Positions 3,238 to 64,000 are shown, counted from the first letter of the stretch. The stretch: DNA of 64,000 bases from IMGVR_UViG_3300023174_000038:284702-348701, one strand, 5' to 3'. Notes: a model not told the origin generated them from the sequence alone. Numbers and translations: made by a program.

Positions 3238-6200
3238 TTAGTCTTTCTTTTTTGTATTAACATTGATGGCTTTACCACTACGGTCAGGATTAGGATCTTC
3301 TCTACGTTTACGTTGAGCGGCACTTGCACGACCCTTCTTACCTAGACTATGTGCTTTACTTTGTGGCAAGCATTTTGGTTTACCTTCTCCTGGTTCTCTA
3401 GCACATGGACCTTTAATCTTTCCTTTAGTATCCATGCGAACCCACTTTTCTTTATTAAACCAATCATGCAAACTTTCATCTGCCCTTTCAATACCTTCTA
3501 GTATAGAACTTTCATTCTTCTTCCCACCGTTACCCCAGTTACTTGCGCCTTTGTTGCGACACTTAACTAATGCACCACTGGCATAAGCACTTGGCCATAC
3601 TTTATAACGACTCTTTACTTTGTAGTAGCAAGCATCTTTCTTTTCGTTCATTAATTCTTCACTAACCATTTCGCCACCACAGTGTGGGCAACTTTCACTG
3701 TGTTGGTCTTCATTTGTTTTATTTTTAGCACAACTACCCGGAAAGCCTGCTTTAGTACCAGCAACTCTATGATAGCCGGACCAGCATTTCAATTCATCTA
3801 GTTGATCTTTTGAATGGTCACCGTGTGTTTCACACATACCGCAGTCTTCACAGACCATTTCCATTTCAATGCTTTCATTGTGCTTCTTCTTACCTGCACA
3901 ATGAGCCTTTTGACTAAAGCCTTTAGGATGACTACAGTTAATACTGCTCTTATATTTTTGACTCCAGCCTTCATCCATCTCTTGTTCATTAACGTAAATT
4001 GCGGCAGTTGTTTTATTTAAACTTTGTGGATCTTTTACGCCGGCTGCTACTTTAATTGCTTTAACTTTTTGTCTATAGTCATCAGCATATTCGGCTAATC
4101 TGTAGCCTAACATTTTACCAATTTCTTCAGGTGTAGCTGGTTTATCTTGCGGAGTATTTGCACCAAAAGTTGTGTCTAGTATCTTAGGCCATGCCATCCA
4201 GACCATATTTGATAACTCTTTATATGCTTTGCTTCTTAATTCTTTAATTTGAGCTTCAGCCTCATCTTCAGAAATACTAGGTGCGGGTGCAGGAATAGTT
4301 CCTTTGAATGCTTGAGCATTACCGGCACCGCCTAATCCTGCGGCAGCTAATGCGCCGGCGCCTGCTGCCTTACCCATGTTACCTAAAAACCCTCTACGGT
4401 TCATATCAGCTTCTTTCAAACCTGATTTTTTACGTATATACAATCTATCCTGTAATATTGAAATAGCATTGTCTAACTTTTTATTCAATGATTGATAGTT
4501 ATCTTTTGCACCATACTTAACGTGCATACTAGTATCAGTATCATTCTGCATTGCAGGAGTTAACAAACCTTTACGTTCTAATCTATCAACTAACTTATCT
4601 AATAGTTCTTGCTTTTGTATAGCATTATCTAATTGTGCTAATCTAGCTTTTAATACAGAATGTTTTTCACCAGGTTGTGCAACTGGTGTTGGTTGAAATT
4701 CTCTACGTAAACCTTGTTGTGCTTTTTGTACTGTGTTCTTTTCAAAATCTTGTCTCCAAGCTTCTATTTCAGCTTCACGCTGTTTCTCTATAGCTAATTT
4801 AGCTTGAATCAACGCATCCAATGATGTAGATTTTAATTGATCACCTAAGTTTTCATCAATTGATGCATAACGCTTATCATCTAAATCATCGTGGTAACTT
4901 CTTTGTGGTGGTTTTTTTAGCTCTATTGGTTTCTTAGATGAACCTCTATAACCACGTTCCCATGCCGCTGCACCTGCTGCCGCACTTTTACCATTTTTAA
5001 CAAAGTGATTAATGACTTCTTGTTTACTGTTAAATCTAGGTGATTCTATACCTTCATTTGTTGCCATTTCGCCATCATTACTATGACCATAATATTTGGC
5101 TACTTTTTGTAAATCAGCAGAATTTCTATCGTTAAGATAATCAGTTACTAAATCATGTATCTGATATCTTTGTTCTTGCGGGGCTGGTAATTCTATTTCA
5201 CCTTCACTTGCATCAGCAATATGTGCGGCGCCGGGACTGTCTAAGAACCATATCTCATCATCCTCATCCCATTCTAATCCCCATTTGTCTATTGTTGCAG
5301 TTAATACATAGTTGTTAGTAGTACCTACTACAAATTTGTTACCGCCTATATAACGTGAGCTATTTGGTTGACCGTAATCTTTTGGTCCTTTAGGGCCGCC
5401 AGTTTGTACAAATTCATTTATACCTTGACTGATACCAGATTTCTTTGTATCATTAGCAAATTGTTTTTTAGTTGCACGAACAATACCACTGAAACGTTTA
5501 TCACCACGCTTGTAATCGCCCTCTTTATCAGCTTTTCCTGCATCGGCAGCGGCCGCTGTTTTATATTGTGCTAGTTTCTCATTAGAGATTTCATCTAGTT
5601 GTGATTCAGGCATTAATCCGTGCTTTGTAATACGAGCATCTAATTCATCACGCTCTTTGGAATATTTTTGTATAAGTTCTTTATTACCTACTTGAATTGC
5701 TTGTCTAAGTTTTTCCTGAATGGCATCTGCTAAATCATAGTATTGATCCATTTTCATTCTAGTGGTATTATCTTCTTTTATTGTTTTACCTTGACCTAAT
5801 TGTTGTAAATCACTTGTTAATACATCTTGTGTAACACTACCCATACCTTTTGAAATCGTAATGCGAGAATGTTTACGATCCTTACTCATAGCAACTACTT
5901 TTGATGGTTGTCCAAAATACTTAACAGTATCACCTATCTGTATGTTCTTCATAGATACATTACCAACATTAACCGGTTTATCACCTGCAAAGTTACCTTG
6001 ATCTCCCCATGGGTCATCTAAACTTTCATTTGTACCAGTAGCTAATCTATCATGGTCACTATCACGTTGGGCTTTTTCTGCCGCTGCCTTCATAGCACGA
6101 CCTTTAGCAAAATCTTTTTCTTGTCTTATTAAACCATATGGATCATACTCATCATCATCTGTTTGTGTATGTCTACCACGTTTAGGATATGATGGTGCAT

Positions 6201-6282
6201 CTGCCCCGTATTCTCTTGCTGGATCATTATGTCCGTAAAAAGGATTGGATTCGTTTATTATACCTTTTAGAATATTGCTCAT
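3238..6282 (-). CDS. 1014-aa modular polyprotein, putative head cargo
   Basis: More than 15 short unrelated modules separated by x-x-E junctions (IINE, GTNE, QLDE, GINE, SIDE, GLKE, KHNE, LMNE, SILE); internal Tat-like peptide; Cys/Lys-rich C-terminal modules. Confidence 0.7.
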   Translation of the reverse strand: MSNILKGIINESNPFYGHNDPAREYGADAPSYPKRGRHTQTDDDEYDPYGLIRQEKDFAKGRAMKAAAEKAQRDSDHDRLATGTNESLDDPWGDQGNFAGDKPVNVGNVSMKNIQIGDTVKYFGQPSKVVAMSKDRKHSRITISKGMGSVTQDVLTSDLQQLGQGKTIKEDNTTRMKMDQYYDLADAIQEKLRQAIQVGNKELIQKYSKERDELDARITKHGLMPESQLDEISNEKLAQYKTAAAADAGKADKEGDYKRGDKRFSGIVRATKKQFANDTKKSGISQGINEFVQTGGPKGPKDYGQPNSSRYIGGNKFVVGTTNNYVLTATIDKWGLEWDEDDEIWFLDSPGAAHIADASEGEIELPAPQEQRYQIHDLVTDYLNDRNSADLQKVAKYYGHSNDGEMATNEGIESPRFNSKQEVINHFVKNGKSAAAGAAAWERGYRGSSKKPIELKKPPQRSYHDDLDDKRYASIDENLGDQLKSTSLDALIQAKLAIEKQREAEIEAWRQDFEKNTVQKAQQGLRREFQPTPVAQPGEKHSVLKARLAQLDNAIQKQELLDKLVDRLERKGLLTPAMQNDTDTSMHVKYGAKDNYQSLNKKLDNAISILQDRLYIRKKSGLKEADMNRRGFLGNMGKAAGAGALAAAGLGGAGNAQAFKGTIPAPAPSISEDEAEAQIKELRSKAYKELSNMVWMAWPKILDTTFGANTPQDKPATPEEIGKMLGYRLAEYADDYRQKVKAIKVAAGVKDPQSLNKTTAAIYVNEQEMDEGWSQKYKSSINCSHPKGFSQKAHCAGKKKHNESIEMEMVCEDCGMCETHGDHSKDQLDELKCWSGYHRVAGTKAGFPGSCAKNKTNEDQHSESCPHCGGEMVSEELMNEKKDACYYKVKSRYKVWPSAYASGALVKCRNKGASNWGNGGKKNESSILEGIERADESLHDWFNKEKWVRMDTKGKIKGPCAREPGEGKPKCLPQSKAHSLGKKGRASAAQRKRREDPNPDRSGKAINVNTKKKD

Positions 6283-6283
6283 A

Positions 6284-7165
6284 TCACGCTTTCTTATTCT
6301 TGTTATCTAACATGCCACGCTTATTAGCTGTTGCCCAAGCAATGTTCTCCGCTTCTTTTTTACTGTGACCTAATTTCTTTTCACTTTGTGCTACATGCTT
6401 AACCATACGGTCTACTTTAGCACCTTCATCTATTGGTGCATGAACTGGACATTGGTCTTGACCATGTGTTCTACACACACATTTCAAATTAGGTTTGCCT
6501 TCTGCTACGCCCTGTTGACCATACGTATCAAGAATTTGTCTAACATAAAAATTATAAAAACCACGACGGCTATTGTATTCTCTATCTCCAAGTACAGTCT
6601 TTAGTGCTTTTACAGCATCAGTTACTTCTGGGCCACGCATTATTTTTAATGAGTCAGTAACTAGTGTATCACCTCTTTGTGAGCCTTCTGATACACCTTG
6701 AACTTGTTTACCTTCTAAGTATTCACGTATAGTGTTTAGATAATCATTGGCTTTAATAATCTTTTCTTGTACCCAACCATCAAGACCTTCTTCTTCACTA
6801 AGGTCTTTAATCATTGAATAAACTTGTTGAGCATTCTTTGCGGCACTGAATAGATCACTACGTGCCATCTCAACTTCGTGGTCTATACGACTTTGACCAT
6901 GTGGCACAAATCCATTTTTACGACTACGTCCTTGTCCCGGAACGACAATAACATCATCTTCTTGTAGTTCTGCTTCACTTATTTCAGCACTTTCATTAAT
7001 GCTGTTAGCATATGGAGCACTAGTCTTTTTACCCTTGAATAGTGTGCCTACTTTCTTGCCACCATATATGCTAGGATTTCCCCTAGATTGTGTGCCACCT
7101 AATGGTGAATTTACAGTAGCTATTGCACCTGCTGTTGTAGTTTCAGTGATTTGTTTGATTTTCAT
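6284..7165 (-). CDS. Modular putative head-packaged protein
   Basis: MKIKQITE start; junctions SINE, ELQE, QGVSE, QGVAE, PIDE. Confidence 0.65.
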   Translation of the reverse strand: MKIKQITETTTAGAIATVNSPLGGTQSRGNPSIYGGKKVGTLFKGKKTSAPYANSINESAEISEAELQEDDVIVVPGQGRSRKNGFVPHGQSRIDHEVEMARSDLFSAAKNAQQVYSMIKDLSEEEGLDGWVQEKIIKANDYLNTIREYLEGKQVQGVSEGSQRGDTLVTDSLKIMRGPEVTDAVKALKTVLGDREYNSRRGFYNFYVRQILDTYGQQGVAEGKPNLKCVCRTHGQDQCPVHAPIDEGAKVDRMVKHVAQSEKKLGHSKKEAENIAWATANKRGMLDNKNKKA

Positions 7166-14735: not shown

Positions 14736-15431
14736 TTATGATTTGCCTTCAATTTTTTCTTTTGTTCGGCAGTTTTCAAAGTGCCATCTACCCATAGTAT
14801 TTTTTCCACCAACTTTGTGGCAGTGAGGGCATTCAACTTGTTCTTTTGGTACTCCTTTAAATCGTAATGATGTTTGTTGTCGCAACTCATCCGTATGTTT
14901 TTTACCATAAAAAGGGTTAGTATTGCCTGGTCTACTTAGTTGTTTTCTGACCTCCGGCCTTTTAGCTGGATTGGACTCACCGTATTGCCAGTAGTTTTTT
15001 CTGCCTTTTAATTTAGTAGATACTTTTAACGCAATCTCCGGATCTCTCATAGGATTATTATTTCCTAATTTTTTAGGAGTATTTTTAGAAATTAACATAC
15101 GAACCTCAGGTCGTTTTGCAGGGTTATCCAATCCATATAATGGAGCAATAGAAATATTATCTGTTCTATTAATCCATTTTTCAGAATGTACTACTTTAAT
15201 TCTCTGTAGTACTCGCTGTTCCCATCGTCTAGCAGAAATAGAATTATTAAATATTTTTCGTACTTCAATAATTGAAGGCTCTCCGTACAATTGTACAATG
15301 GTGCTAACATGCCTGCTTGAAGTTTTGTAACTAACCCACAAATCACCCGGGTGACATTTTTTAGCATAGCGGACTCCGTAATACCATCTATTAATTTTTG
15401 GCCAACCTAATAGATATGTATAAGGTATCAT
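14736..15431 (-). CDS. Free-standing GIY-YIG-type homing endonuclease (HEG1)
   Basis: Likely start MIPYTY (ATGA overlap with upstream stop); YTY...YYGVR, NUMOD3-like NPAKRPEV repeats, C-terminal CPHC zinc motif. Confidence 0.75.
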   Translation of the reverse strand: MIPYTYLLGWPKINRWYYGVRYAKKCHPGDLWVSYKTSSRHVSTIVQLYGEPSIIEVRKIFNNSISARRWEQRVLQRIKVVHSEKWINRTDNISIAPLYGLDNPAKRPEVRMLISKNTPKKLGNNNPMRDPEIALKVSTKLKGRKNYWQYGESNPAKRPEVRKQLSRPGNTNPFYGKKHTDELRQQTSLRFKGVPKEQVECPHCHKVGGKNTMGRWHFENCRTKEKIEGKS

Positions 15432-16054
15432 TGTTTTCCTTCTAATTTTTCTTTTGTTCTTCCATAAGCTGCAACTCCTAATACAGCACCCATAGCAATA
15501 TGATAAAGTCCGGCACCTTGTAATGTTAACGGTTGCCATTGATTAGTGACTTGACCCTTACTCATTGCTTGTAATAAACTCCATAATACGGGGAATATAA
15601 CAAAATCACATGTACATGTTATCATATAAACGAATGCCATTAATGGTCGCCATTTTTTATTAATAAAATCTGTGTTATCATTAGCTACTAATACATCTGC
15701 CCCGCTTGCGGCATTTGTTGGGGCTGCTCCTGTGAGGACGGGTTGATTACTGTTTGATTGGTTAATGTTTTGTGTGCTACCAAATCCAGACGTTGGCGCT
15801 CCAAATCCTGAACCACCACCAAAGCCCGTTGATGTTGACGTACCAAAACCACCGGGTGAGCCGAAGCCTCCTGCTGACGGTGAGCCAAATGTTGAAGACC
15901 CGCCAAATGATATGTTGACTGCATTACTATCTCCAAATGAACTGCCTTGCGGAAATTGCTGTATTGTAGGATCAGCCGCTAACATTTCGTGATGGTCATC
16001 ATCTAATGTCATTGGTTGCTCAAATCCTGTTTTCTTAGGTAATATCGTTGCCAT
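15428..16054 (-). CDS. Holin-like membrane protein with FG-rich N-terminal region
   Basis: KWRPLMAFVYM... and YHIAMGAVLGVAAYGRTKEK hydrophobic segments typical of phage 3TM holin-like proteins. Confidence 0.65.
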   Translation of the reverse strand: MATILPKKTGFEQPMTLDDDHHEMLAADPTIQQFPQGSSFGDSNAVNISFGGSSTFGSPSAGGFGSPGGFGTSTSTGFGGGSGFGAPTSGFGSTQNINQSNSNQPVLTGAAPTNAASGADVLVANDNTDFINKKWRPLMAFVYMITCTCDFVIFPVLWSLLQAMSKGQVTNQWQPLTLQGAGLYHIAMGAVLGVAAYGRTKEKLEGKQ

Positions 16055-17221: not shown

Positions 17222-17391
17222 ATATATATTTATCTTTTGTAGTTTGAATACATCAAATAACGATATTTGATACCGTAGCCTAATATTTATCATTAATAGC
17301 TACACAATAAGTATGCTACTATGTCTCTATGTATTGACCTTAAATAAACTTGAGTGTTATGAGAACTCACGCTCTACAAAGGAGAATTAAC

Positions 17392-18174
17392 TTGAGCAAA
17401 AGAAAAACTAGCGCATTACGTACACAAGACACACGGTTTTCACACAATAAAAAACAAGATAATCAAACTTTTTATACACATGAATCAAAAACGATAGATT
17501 TCTCACAAGCACAGAGGGAAATGCGGGTCAATAAAAAGCCCGTTCAACTTATCCCCAAGTCAGTTAACCAAGAAAATTACATCCTCGCACTACTGGACGA
17601 AGAGACAGATATTGTCGTAGTCACAGGTCCTGCGGGTACTGGTAAAACTTACTTAGCTATGCTTGCTGCCATAAAAGCTATGCGTAATGGTGAATGTGAT
17701 AGAATTATATTATCTAGGCCAGCAGTAGGTGTTGATGATGAAAAACACGGTTTCTTACCGGGAGATATCAATCAAAAGATGGAACCATGGACTAGGCCGT
17801 TATTAGACGTTCTGCGTGAATACTACACCACAAAGGAAATAGCCCACATGCTAGAAGAACAGATAGTGGAAATTGCACCTCTAGCATTCTGTCGAGGAAG
17901 AAATTTCAAACATAGTTGGGTAGTATTAGACGAGGCACAAAACGCAACCCCGGGTCAACTCAAAATGATTATGACCAGAATCGGCGTCGGTAGTAAGATT
18001 GTAATTACTGGCGATATTGAACAAGCCGATCGTAAAACAGCCGACAACGGGCTATTAGATTTACAAAATAGGTTGAGGAAGGGGGTGATTCCGGGATTGC
18101 AATTATGTAAGTTTGAACTGAAAGATGTTCAACGACATAAAATAATTGAACATGTGCTTAACTTATATAGTTAA
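17392..18174 (+). CDS. phoH: PhoH-family ATPase
   Basis: TTG start after AAGGAG; GPAGTGKT, RPAV...GFLPG, RGR, LDEAQN, GDIEQAD. Confidence 0.93.
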   Translation: MSKRKTSALRTQDTRFSHNKKQDNQTFYTHESKTIDFSQAQREMRVNKKPVQLIPKSVNQENYILALLDEETDIVVVTGPAGTGKTYLAMLAAIKAMRNGECDRIILSRPAVGVDDEKHGFLPGDINQKMEPWTRPLLDVLREYYTTKEIAHMLEEQIVEIAPLAFCRGRNFKHSWVVLDEAQNATPGQLKMIMTRIGVGSKIVITGDIEQADRKTADNGLLDLQNRLRKGVIPGLQLCKFELKDVQRHKIIEHVLNLYS

Positions 18175-18471: not shown

Positions 18472-18552
18472 TATAAATAGTAGTGTAGCCCACGAGAATC
18501 TGACCTCTCCGACTACTCTAATGCTCATATCTTGAAAGGAAGCACCAGCATG
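18472..18552 (+). promoter_or_regulatory. Late promoter plus conserved structured HEG leader (copy 1)
   Basis: TATAAATA then AGT-GTAG..CAC-GAGA/TCTC-C..CTAC-TCTAA-TGCT..AAGGA-AGCA-CCAGC-ATG. Confidence 0.8.
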
Positions 18553-19383
18553 ACTATTTATTATTTAATGATTAAGACGCATAATATTACGGGTCTTAAA
18601 TATTTGTGTCAAACTAAACAAAAGAATCCTATTAATTACACAGGTTCCGGAGTTGATTGGAAAATACACTTAAAAGAGCACGGCATAGATATTAGGACTA
18701 GTATCATTAAAGCATCAACTGATAAACATATCATCAATGAGTTAGGAAGACATCTCAGTAATCTATGGAAAATAACTACTGCCATGAATGATTACGGGGA
18801 CAGAATATGGGCTAATAAAATACCTGAAACGGGCGGTGGTGCAGGAGTTACTAGTGATATAGCAAAACAAAGATACGTAGATCATCCTGAGTTGATTGAA
18901 CAATTCAAGAAAACAATGACATTGCCGCAAAGTGTTCAGAGAAGAAAAAAATCTAGGGCTGTTACAGTTTCACAACCTGAATTTAGAGAAAAATTCAAAT
19001 CAACAATGAAACTTGCCATGAATAGACCAGAAGTCAGATTGAATAATAGCATCAATCAGACGAAAGCTCAAAATAGACCCGACGTAAAACTGAATAAAAG
19101 TATTAAACAAAAGGAAGCTCAAAATAGACCCGAAGTTAAGATGCTCAAGAGTAAAAATGGCAAAATAGCACAGAATAGACCAGAGGTTAAAGATTCCAAA
19201 TCAGGTAAAAATAATTATAGATACGATCCAACAATTCGCACATTTATTCATTCTGACGGAACGATAGAAAAAATGCCAGCTAACGATTTCAGTCTAAAGT
19301 ACAACTTAGATCGCGGGTGGCTATCCAATGTAATTCTTGGAAATAGAAAAACAATAAAAGGTTGGTCTGTTAAAGTGCAGTAA
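18550..19383 (+). CDS. Free-standing GIY-YIG (Seg-like) homing endonuclease (HEG2)
   Basis: IYYLMIKTHNITGLKYLCQT..YTGSG..WKIHL; ANKIPETGGG; five tandem NRP(E/D)V repeats. Confidence 0.8.
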   Translation: MTIYYLMIKTHNITGLKYLCQTKQKNPINYTGSGVDWKIHLKEHGIDIRTSIIKASTDKHIINELGRHLSNLWKITTAMNDYGDRIWANKIPETGGGAGVTSDIAKQRYVDHPELIEQFKKTMTLPQSVQRRKKSRAVTVSQPEFREKFKSTMKLAMNRPEVRLNNSINQTKAQNRPDVKLNKSIKQKEAQNRPEVKMLKSKNGKIAQNRPEVKDSKSGKNNYRYDPTIRTFIHSDGTIEKMPANDFSLKYNLDRGWLSNVILGNRKTIKGWSVKVQ

Positions 19384-20296
19384 GTTCACAAAGAGTTGCC
19401 GCCAAACTTATTTCAGGGATACCTACCATACTTAAATTAGCTAAACCATTTCTAATAACAATAATACTAGCATCACGCTTTTCATTAGACTTACCCCATA
19501 AATCTAAATTCTGATACATCCATGCATATGTATCTTCAATACGTGTAGGATACAATGCAATATATTGTAATAACTGTTGTCTGCCTTCAAGGATTTTACC
19601 CGCTTTAAACAAAGTAGTTGCTTCTACTAATAACTCATCTTCACCGCTACTTTGAGTTTGTGCTGATAACAATGTTCCTGTACTACTGTTAACTTGTAAT
19701 TGATTTAAACATTTACGCAAGTCTGGATACGTAGCACGTACATAATTATCCAAATCATCTAAATCAAATACAATGTTTTCACTCACTAACACAGTTGCCG
19801 CTCTCGCAGTGAACTCTGTTTTATCTGTTTTTGTAATGTGAAACTCATGGCATCGTGACTTTAATGCAGGGATAATCCTATGTTGATAGTTACATGTTAG
19901 AATAAATCGTGCGGTCATATGATATGCTTCCATATCGTTACGCAATGCCGCTTGCCCAGCTGGTGTCAAATAATCTGCTTCATCTAGTAATACTACTTTG
20001 AAGTTACCGAAAGGCATTGTTTGTACAAAGTTAACAATCTTGTTACGTACAACATCTACACTATTCTCACGTGATGCATTGATTTCTAATACATCATATT
20101 CACTTACATCAAGTTCATGGATCAATACTTTAGCAAGAGTTGTTTTACCTGTACCCGGATCACCTGATAGTAATAGATGAGGGATAGAGCCATCTTTAAC
20201 CCAACCATGTACTTGATTCTTTTGTCGTTCATCTACAAACACGTAGTCTGCTACTGTTGATGGCCTGTATGATTCTACCCAAAGTTTCTTATTCAT
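19370..20296 (-). CDS. Clamp loader ATPase subunit (gp44/RFC-small type)
   Basis: LWVESYRP, GDPGTGKTT, INAS, LLDEAD, SRC motif, PDLRKCLN. Confidence 0.92.
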   Translation of the reverse strand: MNKKLWVESYRPSTVADYVFVDERQKNQVHGWVKDGSIPHLLLSGDPGTGKTTLAKVLIHELDVSEYDVLEINASRENSVDVVRNKIVNFVQTMPFGNFKVVLLDEADYLTPAGQAALRNDMEAYHMTARFILTCNYQHRIIPALKSRCHEFHITKTDKTEFTARAATVLVSENIVFDLDDLDNYVRATYPDLRKCLNQLQVNSSTGTLLSAQTQSSGEDELLVEATTLFKAGKILEGRQQLLQYIALYPTRIEDTYAWMYQNLDLWGKSNEKRDASIIVIRNGLANLSMVGIPEISLAATLCELTAL

Positions 20297-20586
20297 TTTC
20301 TTAACATTTCTAGTGTAATTATGTGAGCTATGCCCTGACCCATATCTTGGTCAGATGGGATGATATGTAAATTGTGATTGTGTCTATCTGTCTTGTCGTC
20401 ATATGCTGAGTATTCTAGGACATATCCACCACTAGCCATATGAATAGTAAAACTCATACCTCTACTATCAAGGCTTGATCCTCTAACAAGAACGCCTCTT
20501 CTGGTATGTTGTTTTGATTCTACTAGACAATCATTATCTTGTGGATACAGAAAATCACGTAGTTTTTGTCTAAACCAATTTATCAT
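20293..20586 (-). CDS. Hypothetical protein
   Basis: 97 aa, ATGA-coupled to clamp loader. Confidence 0.6.
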   Translation of the reverse strand: MINWFRQKLRDFLYPQDNDCLVESKQHTRRGVLVRGSSLDSRGMSFTIHMASGGYVLEYSAYDDKTDRHNHNLHIIPSDQDMGQGIAHIITLEMLRK

Positions 20587-20963
20587 TAAAATACCTTATC
20601 ACCCATTGTTTCATCCTCCATCGGTTCATCCGATACTAATAGTATATCACCGGGATCAACTTTACGCAATGTTTGTTTACCCAAAGGTGTCTCAACTGTA
20701 ATACCCCTTGTCCAACGCCCGTGACTGATAAGAATCCATTTACCAATTTCTAATTGCGGATCATCCTGTTCTGGACCCAAACCATAAATCTTTGCCCAAC
20801 GTGGACGAATGCCTGAACTTTTTTTATCATCATCTGGTATAATGATACCACCTTTACTGATACGTTCATCAAAATGCATCTCGGATACAATGATATGATC
20901 CTTAAAGAATCTCATTGTATCTACTTTAGTAGGGCTAAATGCTGGTTTACTATATTGGTTCAT
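20586..20963 (-). CDS. groES: GroES-like co-chaperonin
   Basis: D.IIV...E..SKGGIIIPD..K; GPE; ..GD.LLV pattern of Cpn10. Confidence 0.75.
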   Translation of the reverse strand: MNQYSKPAFSPTKVDTMRFFKDHIIVSEMHFDERISKGGIIIPDDDKKSSGIRPRWAKIYGLGPEQDDPQLEIGKWILISHGRWTRGITVETPLGKQTLRKVDPGDILLVSDEPMEDETMGDKVF

Positions 20964-21319
20964 TTCTTTTTAAGTTCCTGTAATTTAATTTGTTCAACTT
21001 CTAATTCATCTTCTAACGATTCTTCTAGTTCACGCTCAATTTCATTAAGTTCTGATAAATCAATCGCTGGTTTGGGAGGAGCAGGTGGTGCAGATGTTTT
21101 TGGTTTGTTACGTATTAGTTGTGCTGAACGATTACCTACAGTTTTATTGTATGAATCGTTTACTTTAGTTGTTGCAGTTTTTATAATACGACCTTGTGCA
21201 TCAATTGTGTCTCCACGTGCATTAACTTTCATATTACCCACTGCTCTAGTTTTTTCATTTTTAGCAGTTAGTGCTGCCATGTCAACGATTTTGCCCATTG
21301 CTGTTTTGTAATTAGCCAT
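20960..21319 (-). CDS. Hypothetical protein
   Basis: 119 aa with SD (AGGAG). Confidence 0.6.
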   Translation of the reverse strand: MANYKTAMGKIVDMAALTAKNEKTRAVGNMKVNARGDTIDAQGRIIKTATTKVNDSYNKTVGNRSAQLIRNKPKTSAPPAPPKPAIDLSELNEIERELEESLEDELEVEQIKLQELKKK

Positions 21320-21329
21320 TATGTTCTCC

Positions 21330-21836
21330 TTATTTTAAAAACTCATCTATAGACAAGTCATAGTACAAGCTATTTATACGGTGTATTCCTATTATAAACA
21401 ATACAAAACTAGCTACACTACTACCACGACCTACACCCCAAACAACATTATTCTTACGCATTGTGTCAACTAAGTATTTCAAATACTGCAATAGTACAAA
21501 CATATTACGTTCTTGAAATTTAATTAGTTCATCACCGGCACGTTGCAACTCTGCTTCATTTTTGCATTGATCTAATACCCATTTAGCAATATCAAACTCA
21601 TAATACTCTTTGGGCATATGCCATTTTGTTTGATTTAATCTATCAAACTCTTCCAAAGAAATAGTTGAAGTGGTGTATTGTTTTAGATTTGGGATATTCT
21701 CTAATGAGAGAAACCCATTAAATTCTATGGGACTATCTACTAATGCGTTAGAGATTGTACGTGTTGGGTCTTGTAAGAACAATTCACATAAATCGTTCTG
21801 ATTGTAAATTAATTGACCATACTTATCTGTTTTCAT
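21330..21836 (-). CDS. Stand-alone fragment of a family C (DnaE-like) DNA polymerase
   Basis: VWGVGRGSSVASFVLFIIGIHRINSLYYDLSIDEFLK matches DnaE GRGS..GSLV.Y.LGIT.VDP....L.FERFL; only 168 aa. Confidence 0.8.
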   Translation of the reverse strand: MKTDKYGQLIYNQNDLCELFLQDPTRTISNALVDSPIEFNGFLSLENIPNLKQYTTSTISLEEFDRLNQTKWHMPKEYYEFDIAKWVLDQCKNEAELQRAGDELIKFQERNMFVLLQYLKYLVDTMRKNNVVWGVGRGSSVASFVLFIIGIHRINSLYYDLSIDEFLK

Positions 21837-21842
21837 TTATGT

Positions 21843-21871
21843 ATTATAGCACAACTGTTACTAAAATACAA
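21843..21871 (-). promoter_or_regulatory. Sigma70-type promoter
   Basis: TTGTAT-17 nt-TATAAT with TGn extension. Confidence 0.75.
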
Positions 21872-58254: not shown

Positions 58255-58581
58255 TTAAACTCTAAAACTCTCTCCGCAACCGCATCGGTCACGCTCATTT
58301 GGGTTACTAAATTCAAACCCTTCATTTAACCCATTACGAACATAATCTACTATCATGTTCTTTAAGTATACATCATGTTTTTTATCTACTAGTACAATAA
58401 AATTTGGTTGTGCATAATTAATAGCAGATTCATCATAACTGTATTCATCAACATACTCTAATACATATGCCAAACCACTACATCCAGTGGTCTTGACGCC
58501 TATTCGTATTCCTAGACCCTTACCACGTTTTTTAATTATTTGTTGTATTTTATTGGAAGCTTTTTCGGTGATTGTAATCAT
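58255..58581 (-). CDS. iscA: IscA/HesB Fe-S cluster carrier
   Basis: GVKTTGCSGLAY and NPNERDRCGCGESF. Confidence 0.95.
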   Translation of the reverse strand: MITITEKASNKIQQIIKKRGKGLGIRIGVKTTGCSGLAYVLEYVDEYSYDESAINYAQPNFIVLVDKKHDVYLKNMIVDYVRNGLNEGFEFSNPNERDRCGCGESFRV

Positions 58582-58582
58582 C

Positions 58583-58906
58583 TTACTTCATTGCTTTGTG
58601 TGCCATTTGTTTGACAACTTTTTTACTATCTTCTTCTTCTGGTTCAACTGGAGTTTCTTGACCTTTAAATATAACCTTATCACCTTGAATATTTGATATT
58701 TTATTCTTCAATGGTGGCTTTTTAATCATATCATACAAATCTTGTTTTGCTAGTATGATATCATTATCTTTATAATATTGTAATAATTCATCAACTGACC
58801 AATCCGAATGTTGGTCACCACTATCAATTTCACTAGTGAGCTGACTTGTGACAGCTACTAATCTAACTAATAGTGGATTCGGATTTGATAGTTCAAATAA
58901 ACGCAT
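58583..58906 (-). CDS. Putative head-associated protein, CTS-like start
   Basis: MRLFELS start, 107 aa. Confidence 0.55.
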   Translation of the reverse strand: MRLFELSNPNPLLVRLVAVTSQLTSEIDSGDQHSDWSVDELLQYYKDNDIILAKQDLYDMIKKPPLKNKISNIQGDKVIFKGQETPVEPEEEDSKKVVKQMAHKAMK

Positions 58907-62564: not shown

Positions 62565-64000
62565 TTAGGATTTGTTCTTTAAACCATTCAATATTGACTT
62601 TAATTTTGACCCCTGTACATCAACTACAATACGCTTGTTTTCAGGCTCTAATATTTCTCCTGTAGTTTGATCTATGATAGGTTCTGTTGATATTAATGTA
62701 CTTTGCGGCTTTAATTTATTCATAATATCTGTAGCACTAGGTTGTGGTCTATAATTATCTTCCCCGTCACCCCCATTGTCACTAATACGCATAGTTTCAA
62801 CATTGTATTCTAAGTCAATCTTCATACCCACCCCGGTTGAACTACGACTTTTCATACATTGTATCTGATACTTACCACGCTCACGCATACTACGACTTGT
62901 AAAAATACCAAACACATTGTCTGCTGTGTTAATCTTACTGATACCACCTGCAATATGACTATGATCAAATTCTTGTTCGTCAACAGCACTACGATTTAAC
63001 TGTGACGCCGTTACCATCAGTATGCTCATTTCTTTTGCAAGATTACGCAATTCTTCAGCAACATACTTGTCTTTAATAAACTGATCGTTAGGATTAACTT
63101 TAACAGATACTGGCATTACTAAATCCAAATAATCAATCATTACAAAGTCAATGTTAATACCTGTTTGAATCTGTACCTCTTTTAAATAAGCACGAATATC
63201 ATTTACATTACTTTGTGCAGGTAATGCTTTAACACGATATTGTCCTGCTTTCTTACCAACCATTTTAACTTTAAGTTCGGTTGATCCAATATCTTTACGA
63301 ATATCTCTTGTGCCCATATTAGTTAACATAGCATCAGTACGCAAACTAGTTAGTTCTTCACTCAATTCTAATGTTACATATACTCCGCTCATTCCTGTCT
63401 GTAACCAATTCAATGCTATATTCATCATAACAAGACTTTTGCCTGAACCACTACCACCTGCAAAGATATTCAATTCACCACGACTCATACCACCATACAG
63501 TATCTTATCCATCTGTGGCCAGCCTGTACTAACTTGTCCACCACTGTTAAAGTATTTGTTAATACGACCGGCCGGATCAGCAAAATAATCTGTGCCCATA
63601 TCTTTTTGTAAACTGATTTGTACTGCTTCTTTAATTAGTTTCTCAACGGGACCAAAATCACCCTTCTCAAGTAAGTCAGCACTCTTTAATATCGCTCTTT
63701 CTAATTCTTGTCGTTTAGTAAAACTTTCAAATTCTTCAAAGAACCAATCATAATGTCCCTGACTCAATTCAGGTATGACTTCAAGATCCATGCCAGTTAA
63801 TGCTTTAATTTGTGTGCTATCAGGCAATACATTATATTTTGTTGTATGTTCTTTAAATAGTTCTGCTACTGGGCGCAATGATTTATCAAAGTTTTCAGAG
63901 TTCATAATATTCATAACTCTGGTATACAGTTCGGCATTTGTAATCATCATTTGCAAAAACAACTTCTGCAATTCTACACTATATTCTTTATTATCCGATT
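62565..64000 (-). CDS. Replicative helicase (DnaB/gp41 type), start beyond window
   Basis: GGSGSGKS Walker A, LELSE, MIDYLDL, TASQLNR, KSR; frame stays open to the window edge (SDNKEYSVELQKL). Confidence 0.92.
   Translation of the reverse strand, partial: SDNKEYSVELQKLFLQMMITNAELYTRVMNIMNSENFDKSLRPVAELFKEHTTKYNVLPDSTQIKALTGMDLEVIPELSQGHYDWFFEEFESFTKRQELERAILKSADLLEKGDFGPVEKLIKEAVQISLQKDMGTDYFADPAGRINKYFNSGGQVSTGWPQMDKILYGGMSRGELNIFAGGSGSGKSLVMMNIALNWLQTGMSGVYVTLELSEELTSLRTDAMLTNMGTRDIRKDIGSTELKVKMVGKKAGQYRVKALPAQSNVNDIRAYLKEVQIQTGINIDFVMIDYLDLVMPVSVKVNPNDQFIKDKYVAEELRNLAKEMSILMVTASQLNRSAVDEQEFDHSHIAGGISKINTADNVFGIFTSRSMRERGKYQIQCMKSRSSTGVGMKIDLEYNVETMRISDNGGDGEDNYRPQPSATDIMNKLKPQSTLISTEPIIDQTTGEILEPENKRIVVDVQGSKLKSILNGLKNKS

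What the first reader, a model, noticed from the sequence alone, without database searches (positions are those of the whole stretch)
21330..21836. DnaE polymerase piece that stops just before the catalytic aspartates
Seen: 168-aa ORF with its own promoter, ending at ...LSIDEFLK*, with no intein motif and no other DnaE part in the window. Known: in DnaE the PDxDxD catalytic motif follows shortly after GRGS...FERFL. Inference: a naturally split family C polymerase assembled non-covalently from dispersed genes, or a module that binds host Pol III, used with a phage clamp loader and gp41-like helicase.
Basis: partly seen in the sequence, partly recalled or inferred. Interest (0 to 1): 0.6.

Follow-up and report, generated by a model that had tools for sequence, protein, structure and literature searches.

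The report
N-half of split mini Pol III
This 168-residue gene of an uncultured freshwater jumbo phage is the front half of a tiny two-piece relative of the bacterial replicative DNA polymerase. The back half, which starts at the catalytic aspartates, sits about 44 kb away in a stretch missing from this assembly, and this arrangement was predicted in 2021 but has never been tested at the bench.

Summary
Window 21330-21836 (minus strand) is a 168-aa ORF ending ...LSIDEFLK. Residues about 70-168 are the N-terminal palm of DNA Pol III alpha, including the GRGS triphosphate loop, and they stop 7 residues before the DxD aspartates.

It is neither an artefact nor a pseudogene. There are 6402 protein clusters, nearly all of 168 aa. 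The stop lies 33 residues after GRGS in 116 of 118 unique sequences. Median dN/dS is 0.09.

The partner exists. It is a 187-aa protein that starts MRIDSDIDIDF and keeps the third aspartate and the RPG and FKKSH finger motifs. The 348.7-kb record lacks it only because both contig ends fall in the block that carries it. A 99.99%-identical contig bridges a 7,545-bp gap and contains it.

The two halves co-occur in 95 and 96 cultured jumbo phages. Both fold onto DnaE/PolC, and they co-fold with ipSAE 0.92 against 0.00 for controls.

There is no PHP domain, thumb, clamp-binding motif or OB domain, and the phage has its own family B polymerase.

Iyer et al. 2021 already predicted this split minimal Pol III in group 2.2 jumbo phages, so this is a new member of a known but untested kind.

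The parts
21330..21836 (-). N-unit of the split minimal Pol III alpha, 168 aa. Residues 1-69 form a small alpha/beta domain with no match in DnaE structures. Residues about 70-168 are the N-terminal palm (E. coli alpha 279-393), with the invariant GVGRGS at 134-139. The protein ends at EFLK, equivalent to E. coli RFLN390-393.
   Evidence: ORF. (PF07733, E 2.9e-8). (phrog_11127, E 1.5e-38, full length). (hhalign against a DnaE family alignment, 96.3%). (AF2, pLDDT 91.0). (Foldseek top 16 rows are all DnaE/PolC; VIA Z 10-12, rmsd 2.3-2.5 A over 93-96 residues, to E. coli 279-393 and M. tuberculosis 307-413). (invariant G134 G136 R137 G138 S139). (dN/dS 0.088).
21843..21871 (-). Promoter-like element in front of the N-unit: -35 TTGTAT (21866-21871), a 17-nt spacer, and an extended -10 TGcTATAAT (21843-21851). 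The -10 ends 6 nt before the ATG and there is no Shine-Dalgarno sequence. This implies a leaderless or nearly leaderless mRNA.
   Evidence: Read directly; 47 of 54 unique upstream sequences of relatives keep TTG-N20-22-TAnnnT-N5-7-ATG, and none of the 54 has an SD-like 4-mer in the last 16 nt. The generic scan does not list it and is not enriched over shuffles. The transcription start is inferred, not measured.
19370..20296 (-). Context: RFC/gp44-like clamp-loader ATPase, about 1 kb downstream of the N-unit. The order N-unit, small ORF, GroES-like gene, small ORF, clamp loader is conserved in distant relatives.
   Evidence: phrog_168, E 3.4e-73. (AAA, DNA_pol3_delta2). Synteny in Paride, RaK2, Phosso, SCTP-2 and Atu_ph07.
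20586..20963 (-). Context: GroES/gp31-like co-chaperonin gene lying between the N-unit and the clamp loader.
   Evidence: phrog_931, E 6.4e-15. (Cpn10, E 6.6e-4, below the Pfam cut-off).
62565..64000 (-). DnaB/gp41-type helicase gene, cut at its 5' end by the end of the window, which is also the end of the contig. The C-unit (187 aa, L341:5469-6032:+) lies 2.25-2.8 kb beyond this end, in a 7,545-bp block that the record lacks. That places it about 44.4 kb from the N-unit on the same strand.
   Evidence: frame open to the end. (DnaB_C, E 5.1e-20). ENA contig ERZ2680843 NODE_543 is 12,864/12,865 identical to the contig end and 739/739 identical to the contig start; the same syntenic block holds the C-unit in four cultured relatives.

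Best explanation
The ORF encodes the N-terminal subunit of a two-subunit, minimal family C (Pol III alpha-type) nucleotidyl transferase, typical of RaK2/PA5oct-like ('group 2.2') jumbo phages.

The N-unit supplies the first half of the Pol-beta-like palm: two long helices and the GRGS loop, which in DnaE holds the triphosphate of the incoming dNTP.

A separately encoded 187-aa C-unit starts two residues after the point where the N-unit ends (E. coli alpha numbering). It supplies:
- the DxDxD strand (D6/D8, equivalent to D401/D403);
- the KxD strand (D71, equivalent to D555);
- the RPG and FKKSH finger motifs.

The two chains associate non-covalently, with the GRGS loop packed on the DxDxD strand, and so rebuild one active site. 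About 355 residues stand in for the 1160-residue cellular enzyme. There is no PHP domain, the thumb is reduced to a short turn, about 90 finger residues are deleted, and there is no clamp-binding motif, HhH or OB domain.

The phage replicates with its own family B polymerase, so the heterodimer is most likely an accessory DNA polymerase for repair, gap filling or one step of replication.

Shown here:
- homology of both halves to DnaE;
- the conserved split point;
- co-occurrence and purifying selection;
- presence of the partner in the same phage;
- a confident co-fold.

Inferred, not shown: physical binding, catalytic activity, the substrate and the biological role.
For: - Identity of the N-unit.
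- Published prediction of exactly this split system in group 2.2 jumbo phages: PMC7824862, sections 3.4.1 and 3.5.
- C-unit family found with my own DnaE HMM in RaK2, Paride, SCTP-2 and Atu_ph07. It matches phrog_11778 'DNA polymerase', E 3.5e-56. hhalign against a DnaE family alignment gives 96.5%, E 8.8e-10.
- C-unit structure: AF2 pLDDT 92.9. The Foldseek top 11 rows are all Pol III alpha. VIA gives Z 8.5-9.4 over 177-184 residues to E. coli 399-776, Taq 458-833 and PolC 968-1291, while the best non-polymerase row has Z 3.1.
- Same phage: the bridging contig L341 is 99.99% and 100% identical to the two ends of the record and carries the C-unit.
- Conservation: GxGRGS in 118/118; the end lies 33 aa after GRGS in 116/118; DxDxD in 129/131; KxD in 129/131; RPxK in 131/131; FK[KRQ]xH in 131/131.
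- Selection: median dN/dS is 0.088 for N and 0.111 for C.
- Co-occurrence: 95 against 96 phage records with the same host distribution. IMG/VR contigs that hold both have them 41-47 kb apart.
- Co-fold: ipSAE 0.92 in three runs, best of 3 controls 0.00. In the tool's calibration the mark was reached by 58 of 80 solved complexes and 2 of 110 mismatched pairs. The runs agree in at least 96% of contacts and the partner pLDDT is at least 92. N residues 129-142 touch C residues 1-12.
- Family B polymerase of about 905-915 aa elsewhere in the genome.
Against: - There is no biochemical evidence for binding or activity anywhere that I could find.
- The co-fold may score high from memory, because the two chains are contiguous parts of one fold in solved DnaE structures. 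My own alignments were used, so the calibration counts hold only roughly.
- The enzyme lacks a thumb, clamp-binding motif, HhH and OB domains, so stable primer-template binding is not obvious.
- Pfam does not recognise the C-unit at all. A profile search of PDB sequences is weak: E 0.19, four short collinear motif matches.
- The C-unit comes from a near-identical contig of another sample, not from this record itself.
Confidence: 0.78

Rival explanations
1. The heterodimer forms as described but is not a templated DNA polymerase. It would be a Pol-beta-fold nucleotidyl transferase with another job, such as untemplated tailing of DNA ends, priming-like synthesis, or making a nucleotide product.
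For: The thumb is reduced to about 8 residues between strand 24-28 and HATGVY37-42, where E. coli has 434-510. About 90 finger residues are missing. No clamp-binding motif, HhH or OB domain is present. A complete family B replicase already exists in the genome.
Against: The finger motifs that DnaE uses at its dNTP and template site (RPG, FxKSH) are invariant. Both genes sit in replication modules: the N-unit next to the clamp loader, the C-unit next to primase and DnaB. All structural matches are to replicative polymerases.
Confidence: 0.15
2. The N-unit works alone as a decoy or adaptor that binds host Pol III or phage replisome parts. It would be a fragment mimic rather than a half-enzyme.
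For: It is a stand-alone gene with its own conserved promoter. It lies far from the C-unit. It carries an extra 69-residue N-terminal domain of unknown role.
Against: The catalytic GxGRGS loop is kept in 118 of 118 unique sequences, which a mere binding module would not need. It co-occurs one-to-one with the C-unit. The co-fold places the loop on the DxDxD strand.
Confidence: 0.05
3. The ORF is an assembly or frameshift artefact, a decaying pseudogene, or the exon or extein of a gene joined by an intron or a split intein.
For: The record is incomplete at both ends. No second DnaE piece is found in it.
Against: The same stop position occurs in 116 of 118 unique sequences from independent assemblies and in cultured phage genomes. 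There are 6402 clusters, nearly all of 168 aa. dN/dS is 0.088. The downstream ORF is an unrelated conserved gene, phrog_14844. The C-unit starts with Met, 2-8 residues before DxDxD, and the N-unit ends at EFLK, which leaves no room for intein halves.
Confidence: 0.02

Closest known systems
Split minimal DNA Pol III alpha of group 2.2 jumbo phages (Iyer, Anantharaman, Krishnan, Burroughs, Aravind 2021, Viruses 13:63, PMC7824862); PHROG families phrog_11127 (N) and phrog_11778 (C)
   Same: It has the same two-gene architecture: an N-terminal NTP-binding unit and a C-terminal Mg2+- and template-binding unit encoded far apart. It sits in the same kind of phage background, with a family B polymerase, an RFC-like clamp loader and DnaB. 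The synteny matches RaK2, PA5oct/Paride, Atu_ph07 and SCTP-2. The N-unit matches phrog_11127 at E 1.5e-38 and the C-unit matches phrog_11778 at E 3.5e-56.
   Different: This copy is from an uncultured freshwater lineage, only 35-47% identical to the cultured examples. In this lineage a Rv2179c-like DEDD exonuclease gene overlaps the start of the C-unit. That holds for 61/64 loci here and 0/76 distant loci. The published description is a prediction without accession numbers in the text I could read, so the identity of families is my inference.
Bacterial DnaE (Pol III alpha) and PolC, family C replicative polymerases (e.g. PDB 2HNH, 3E0D, 5LEW, 3F2B)
   Same: It shares the Pol-beta-like palm with the GS loop, the three catalytic aspartates, and the RPG and FxKSH finger motifs in the same order. 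Structural superposition covers N residues 70-168 on E. coli 279-393 and C residues 1-187 on E. coli 399-776.
   Different: It is two chains instead of one, 355 aa instead of 1160. There is no PHP domain, the thumb is reduced to a turn, there are large finger deletions, and there are no beta-clamp motif, HhH, OB or tau-binding domains. It has an extra 69-aa N-terminal domain.
Cyanobacterial split DnaE joined by the DnaE split intein (from my own knowledge, not tested here)
   Same: A family C polymerase encoded by two distant genes.
   Different: In the cyanobacterial case the split lies far downstream of the active site, and the halves carry intein fragments that splice them into one chain. 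Here the split cuts the active site between the GS loop and the DxD strand, and no intein sequence is present.

Membership tests
Family C DNA polymerase catalytic core (DnaE/PolC) | N-terminal palm with the hG[GS] triphosphate loop (GPGRGS in E. coli, 359-364) | tested here: met
   GVGRGS at 134-139 of the N-unit. GxGRGS is present in 118 of 118 unique family members. PF07733 matches above its cut-off. VIA gives Z 10-12 to DnaE 279-393.
Family C DNA polymerase catalytic core (DnaE/PolC) | Three catalytic aspartates (E. coli D401, D403, D555) | tested here: met
   They are not in the window ORF itself. They are in the partner C-unit: D6/D8 (DxDxD) and D71 (KxD), kept in 129 of 131 unique sequences. 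The two exceptions were not examined and may be loci cut at an edge.
Family C DNA polymerase catalytic core (DnaE/PolC) | Finger motifs RPG and FxKSH in the same order | tested here: met
   IRPGK at 138-142 and FKKSH at 167-171 of the C-unit, in 131 of 131 sequences. They align to E. coli 638-642 and 756-760.
Family C DNA polymerase catalytic core (DnaE/PolC) | Single polypeptide with PHP domain, thumb, beta-clamp-binding motif and OB domain (the cellular architecture) | tested here: not met
   PF02811, PF17657 and PF14579 are absent from the record, and PF07733 positions beyond about 96 are absent from the record and from 5 cultured relatives. The 7.5-kb gap was not scanned with these models. 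The gene calls precomputed on L341 list no such family. The C-unit ends at the equivalent of E. coli 776. The thumb segment 434-510 is replaced by about 8 residues.
Family C DNA polymerase catalytic core (DnaE/PolC) | Template-directed DNA synthesis | not testable with these tools
   This needs a reconstitution assay. No experimental report was found.
Split minimal Pol III alpha of group 2.2 jumbo phages (Iyer et al. 2021) | Separate N (NTP-binding) and C (Mg2+/template-binding) proteins encoded by distant genes | tested here: met
   The N-unit is in the window. The C-unit lies about 44.4 kb away on the bridging contig of the same phage. The same arrangement is found in 4 cultured relatives, 34-182 kb apart.
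Split minimal Pol III alpha of group 2.2 jumbo phages (Iyer et al. 2021) | Phage background: family B polymerase, RFC-like clamp loader, DnaB helicase, and no other Pol III domains | tested here: met
Split minimal Pol III alpha of group 2.2 jumbo phages (Iyer et al. 2021) | The two proteins form one enzyme | tested here: inconclusive
   The co-fold gives ipSAE 0.92 against 0.00 for the best of 3 controls, with the active-site halves apposed. This is a prediction and it may reflect memory of intact DnaE structures.
Split-intein DnaE | Intein N- and C-fragments at the split | tested here: not met
   The N-unit ends at EFLK and the C-unit begins with Met 2-8 residues before DxDxD. There is no extra sequence.

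The most novel reading that the evidence does not exclude
The 355-residue N+C pair would be the smallest active family C DNA polymerase. In this freshwater lineage it would work with the translationally coupled Rv2179c-like DEDD exonuclease as a three-piece 'mini Pol III core'. Its activity would be gated by assembly, because the N-unit is made from its own leaderless transcript about 44 kb from the C-unit. That would give the phage a switchable second polymerase beside its family B replicase.
Probability: 0.25. Interest if true: 0.7.

Novelty: new member of a known kind. Interest (0 to 1): 0.45.

Why it matters
If the pair is active, it would define the minimal catalytic core of the bacterial-type replicative polymerase: palm plus a stump of fingers, in two chains. 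It would also offer a natural, already split scaffold for asking which parts of Pol III alpha chemistry needs and which parts replisome coupling needs.

It raises the question of why a large and abundant clade of jumbo phages keeps a second, unrelated polymerase under strong purifying selection next to a complete family B replisome. The clade is well sampled here: 6402 clusters of the N-unit alone.

There is a practical lesson as well. The apparent absence of the partner from a record that CheckV rates '100% complete' was an assembly gap. Absence calls in viral contigs need a synteny check.

Tried and rejected
- Pfam models for the rest of DnaE found nothing beyond the N-unit in the record or in five relatives.
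- A regular-expression search for PDxDxD plus KxDxLG in ORFs of the record found nothing useful.
- phmmer with E. coli DnaE 390-930 against the ORFs of five genomes gave only noise, apart from Atu_ph07 58304-58879 at E 0.56. That ORF later proved to be a true C-unit.
- HMMs of 64 core gene families against E. coli DnaE recovered only the N-unit. A scan for conserved DxD in those families gave no candidate.
- The weak hit own 176911-177549 (E 0.12 to the C-unit HMM) was rejected. It lacks the KxD aspartate and the N-terminal DxDxD, and its N-terminus looks like a hydrophobic membrane segment.
- A profile of the C-unit against PDB sequences gave only E 0.19 to M. tuberculosis DnaE1. Pfam gave nothing for the C-unit.
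- The generic promoter scan was not above its shuffles.
- Complex prediction was unreachable twice before it ran.
- Fused single-chain forms and relatives longer than 294 aa were therefore not looked for.
- Literature searches for experimental follow-up of the split Pol III found none.

Full report
**The observation**

Window 21330-21836 on the minus strand holds a 168-aa ORF with an ATG start, ending ...GIHRINSLYYDLSIDEFLK*. Pfam PF07733 (DNA_pol3_alpha) matches residues 89-167 to profile positions 16-94 of 260, E 2.9e-8, above the curated cut-off. A direct comparison with solved DnaE sequences aligns residues 120-167 with E. coli alpha 345-392. In E. coli, GPGRGS is at 359-364, FERFLN at 388-393 and PDFDVDF at 400-406. 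PHROGs has a family of just this size: phrog_11127, 171 positions, 'DNA polymerase', E 1.5e-38 over the full length.

**Where it comes from**

The window is the last 64 kb of a 348,701-bp IMG/VR virus record that CheckV rates 100% complete. Its source contig is jgi:3300023174 Ga0214921_10000017.

- tblastn of the protein against 50,697 phage records finds 95 records. Every listed one of 280 kb or more is a RaK2-, PA5oct-, Atu_ph07-, SCTP-2- or BF-type jumbo phage, and a few shorter records are listed too. Identities are 35-47%.
- In Paride, RaK2, Phosso, SCTP-2 and Atu_ph07 the homologue is an ORF of 169-181 aa.
- In all five it sits in the same gene order: N-unit, a small ORF, a GroES-like gene, one or more small ORFs, and an RFC-like clamp loader.
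- PF07733 matches each of those genomes once, always ending at profile position 95-98.
- The word search finds 6402 clusters at E <= 1e-3 within the length window of 92-294 aa. Nearly all of the 120 listed are 168 aa.
- In 118 unique sequences from IMG/VR loci, GxGRGS is present in all. The protein ends exactly 33 residues after GRGS in 116.
- Median dN/dS against relatives is 0.088, maximum 0.26.

The ORF is therefore a real gene, conserved at this length. It is not a frameshift, an assembly error or a decaying fragment.

**What is already published**

Iyer et al. [quoted passage not shown] No accession numbers were available in the text held, and no supplementary files are held. I found no experimental follow-up.

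**Finding the partner**

Pfam models for PHP, fingers and HhH find nothing in the record. Simple motif and single-sequence searches also failed.

I then built a DnaE profile from 80 viral DnaE loci plus E. coli DnaE. I searched it, with filters off, against all ORFs of this record and of four complete relatives fetched whole. One family of 191-213-aa ORFs stood out:

- Paride 15226-15828
- RaK2 115150-115791
- SCTP-2 158346-158927
- Atu_ph07 58304-58879

The members start ...(T/P)D(I/V)DIDx and contain K(V/I/L/F)D(I/L/F)L, AMIRPxK and FKKxHxxxY.

**Why the record lacks the partner**

The record itself has no member of this family, even in a six-frame search. Synteny explains this. In all four relatives the C-unit lies between the orthologues of two particular genes. 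One is cut by the start of this contig. The other, a DnaB-type helicase at window 62565-63998, is open at its 5' end and cut by the end of this contig.

Exact-protein look-ups recovered contigs that span this block. One of them, ENA ERZ2680843 NODE_543 (locus L341), matches the record at both ends:

- 12,864 of 12,865 bases identical to the last 12.9 kb of the record;
- 739 of 739 bases identical to its first 739 bases.

It bridges a 7,545-bp gap. Inside the gap is a 187-aa ORF, L341:5469-6032, reading MRIDSDIDIDFGDRD...GYFKLDLLNV...AVIRPGKKH...FKKSHSLAY. It lies about 44.4 kb from the N-unit on the same strand. Six further contigs 85-90% identical to the record carry the same gene in the same place.

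The 'missing' half is therefore an assembly gap.

**Evidence that the partner is the rest of the DnaE core**

- The C-unit matches phrog_11778 'DNA polymerase', E 3.5e-56.
- Pfam does not see it, and a profile search of PDB sequences is only suggestive (E 0.19, four collinear motif matches to M. tuberculosis DnaE1).
- Profile-profile comparison with my DnaE alignment gives 96.5% probability, E 8.8e-10. It pairs HATGVY with HAGGVV (E. coli 511), KLD with KFD (D555), RPG with RPG (639) and FKKSH with FNKSH (756).
- The AF2 model has pLDDT 92.9 and pTM 0.82.
- The first 11 Foldseek rows are all Pol III alpha (best E 2.7e-3, probability 1.00).
- VIA-align superposes residues 1-187 on E. coli 399-776 (Z 8.5, rmsd 3.5 A, 177 residues), Taq 458-833 (Z 9.3) and PolC 968-1291 (Z 9.4). 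The best non-polymerase row has Z 3.1.

For the N-unit, the model has pLDDT 91.0. Residues about 70-168 superpose on E. coli 279-393 (Z 10-11, rmsd about 2.5 A over 93 residues) and on M. tuberculosis 307-413 (Z 12.1). Residues 1-69 have no counterpart in the rows returned.

**Anatomy**

Put together, N residues 70-168 plus C residues 1-187 correspond to E. coli alpha 279-776. The cut falls between N393 and about R396.

- The thumb (434-510) is replaced by about 8 residues.
- About 90 finger residues between RPG and FxKSH are missing.
- Everything after 776 (clamp motif, HhH, OB, tau-binding) and the PHP domain is absent.
- All catalytic and dNTP-site motifs are kept: DxDxD in 129/131, KxD in 129/131, RPxK in 131/131 and FK[KRQ]xH in 131/131 unique C-units.
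- C-unit dN/dS is 0.111.
- There is no room for split-intein fragments at either side of the cut.

**Do the halves belong together?**

- The C-unit occurs in 96 phage records and the N-unit in 95, with the same host distribution.
- IMG/VR contigs that contain both have them 41-47 kb apart.
- In cultured phages the distance ranges from 34 kb (RaK2) to 182 kb (Atu_ph07).
- A co-fold of N (alignment A3) and C (A4) gave ipSAE 0.92 in three runs against 0.00 for the best of 3 controls.
- In the tool's calibration that mark was reached by 58 of 80 solved complexes and 2 of 110 mismatched pairs. Because my own alignments were used, those counts hold only roughly.
- The runs agree in at least 96% of contacts, and the partner pLDDT is at least 92.
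- N residues 129-142, the GRGS loop, touch C residues 1-12, the DxDxD strand.

The two chains are contiguous in solved DnaE structures, so this pass may come from memory. It shows that the pieces are compatible with rebuilding one palm, not that they bind.

**Most likely mechanism**

The most likely mechanism is a non-covalent heterodimer that rebuilds a Pol-beta-like active site from two chains. This would give a minimal family C polymerase beside the phage's own family B replicase, an ORF of 905-915 aa at about G000 277.5-280.2 kb.

Both genes lie in replication modules. The N-unit is next to the clamp loader. The C-unit is next to primase and DnaB, and in this freshwater lineage it sits directly behind a Rv2179c-like DEDD exonuclease whose gene overlaps it by 4 nt. 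That adjacency holds in 61 of 64 loci of this lineage and in 0 of 76 distant loci.

The role (repair, gap filling or a share of replication) is inferred, as it is in Iyer et al. The lack of a thumb and of clamp contacts leaves open a non-replicative nucleotidyl-transferase activity.

**Promoter**

The generic scan shows no enrichment. But TTGTAT (21866-21871), a 17-nt spacer and TGcTATAAT (21843-21851) end 6 nt before the ATG. Of 54 unique upstream sequences from relatives, 47 keep TTG-N20-22-TAnnnT-N5-7-ATG while the spacer varies, and none has a Shine-Dalgarno-like 4-mer. This fits a conserved sigma-70-type promoter that gives a leaderless or nearly leaderless mRNA. The transcription start was not measured.

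**Verdict**

- The system is a new member, from an uncultured freshwater lineage, of a kind predicted in 2021 and still untested.

Noticed in passing
window 21837-21871 (- strand): A conserved sigma-70-type promoter (TTGTAT, 17 nt, TGcTATAAT) ends only 6 nt before the N-unit ATG, with no Shine-Dalgarno sequence. The same architecture is kept in 47 of 54 unique upstream sequences of relatives. This implies a leaderless mRNA.
   Followed up: partly
window 62565-64000; G000 positions 1-448: Both ends of the 348,701-bp record cut genes: a DnaB helicase at the window end and a 166-aa gene at the start. A 99.99%-identical contig (L341) shows that 7,545 bp, holding about 15 genes, is missing, although CheckV rates the record 100% complete.
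   Followed up: yes
L341:4924-5472 (+), in the gap beyond the window end: A Rv2179c-like DEDD 3'-5' exonuclease gene (Pfam E 2.3e-31) overlaps the start of the C-unit by 4 nt. This adjacency is present in 61 of 64 loci of this lineage and in 0 of 76 distant loci. It could be a lineage-specific proofreading partner.
   Followed up: partly
window 21630-21836 (N-unit residues 1-69): The N-terminal 69 residues form a confident small alpha/beta domain with no counterpart in DnaE structures among the rows returned. In the co-fold this domain touches C-unit residues 43-51 and 65-68. Its origin and role are unknown.
   Followed up: no
window 19370-21836 (- strand): The gene order N-unit, 119-aa ORF (phrog_14844), GroES/gp31-like gene, 97-aa ORF, RFC-like clamp loader is conserved in Paride, RaK2, Phosso, SCTP-2 and Atu_ph07. 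A chaperonin gene embedded in a replication cluster is unexplained.
   Followed up: partly
window 18532-19383 (+ strand): A 283-aa ORF on the opposite strand to its neighbours carries QNRPEV(K/R)-like repeats. It has no Pfam hit. It might be a mobile or homing-type insertion next to the clamp loader.
   Followed up: no
window 17350-18174 (+ strand): A PhoH-like ATPase (PF02562, E 1.1e-68) is conserved in all four cultured relatives compared.
   Followed up: no
L175:486-1091 and 6002-6640; L179:1194-1787: Some close relatives carry NUMOD3 or HNH_3 homing-endonuclease-like genes inserted in the block that holds the C-unit. Such variable insertions may be why assemblies break here.
   Followed up: no
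G000:C1:57050-75040 (- strand), outside the window: A 5,996-aa ORF with homologues of 3,300-4,450 aa in Paride, RaK2, SCTP-2 and Atu_ph07.
   Followed up: no
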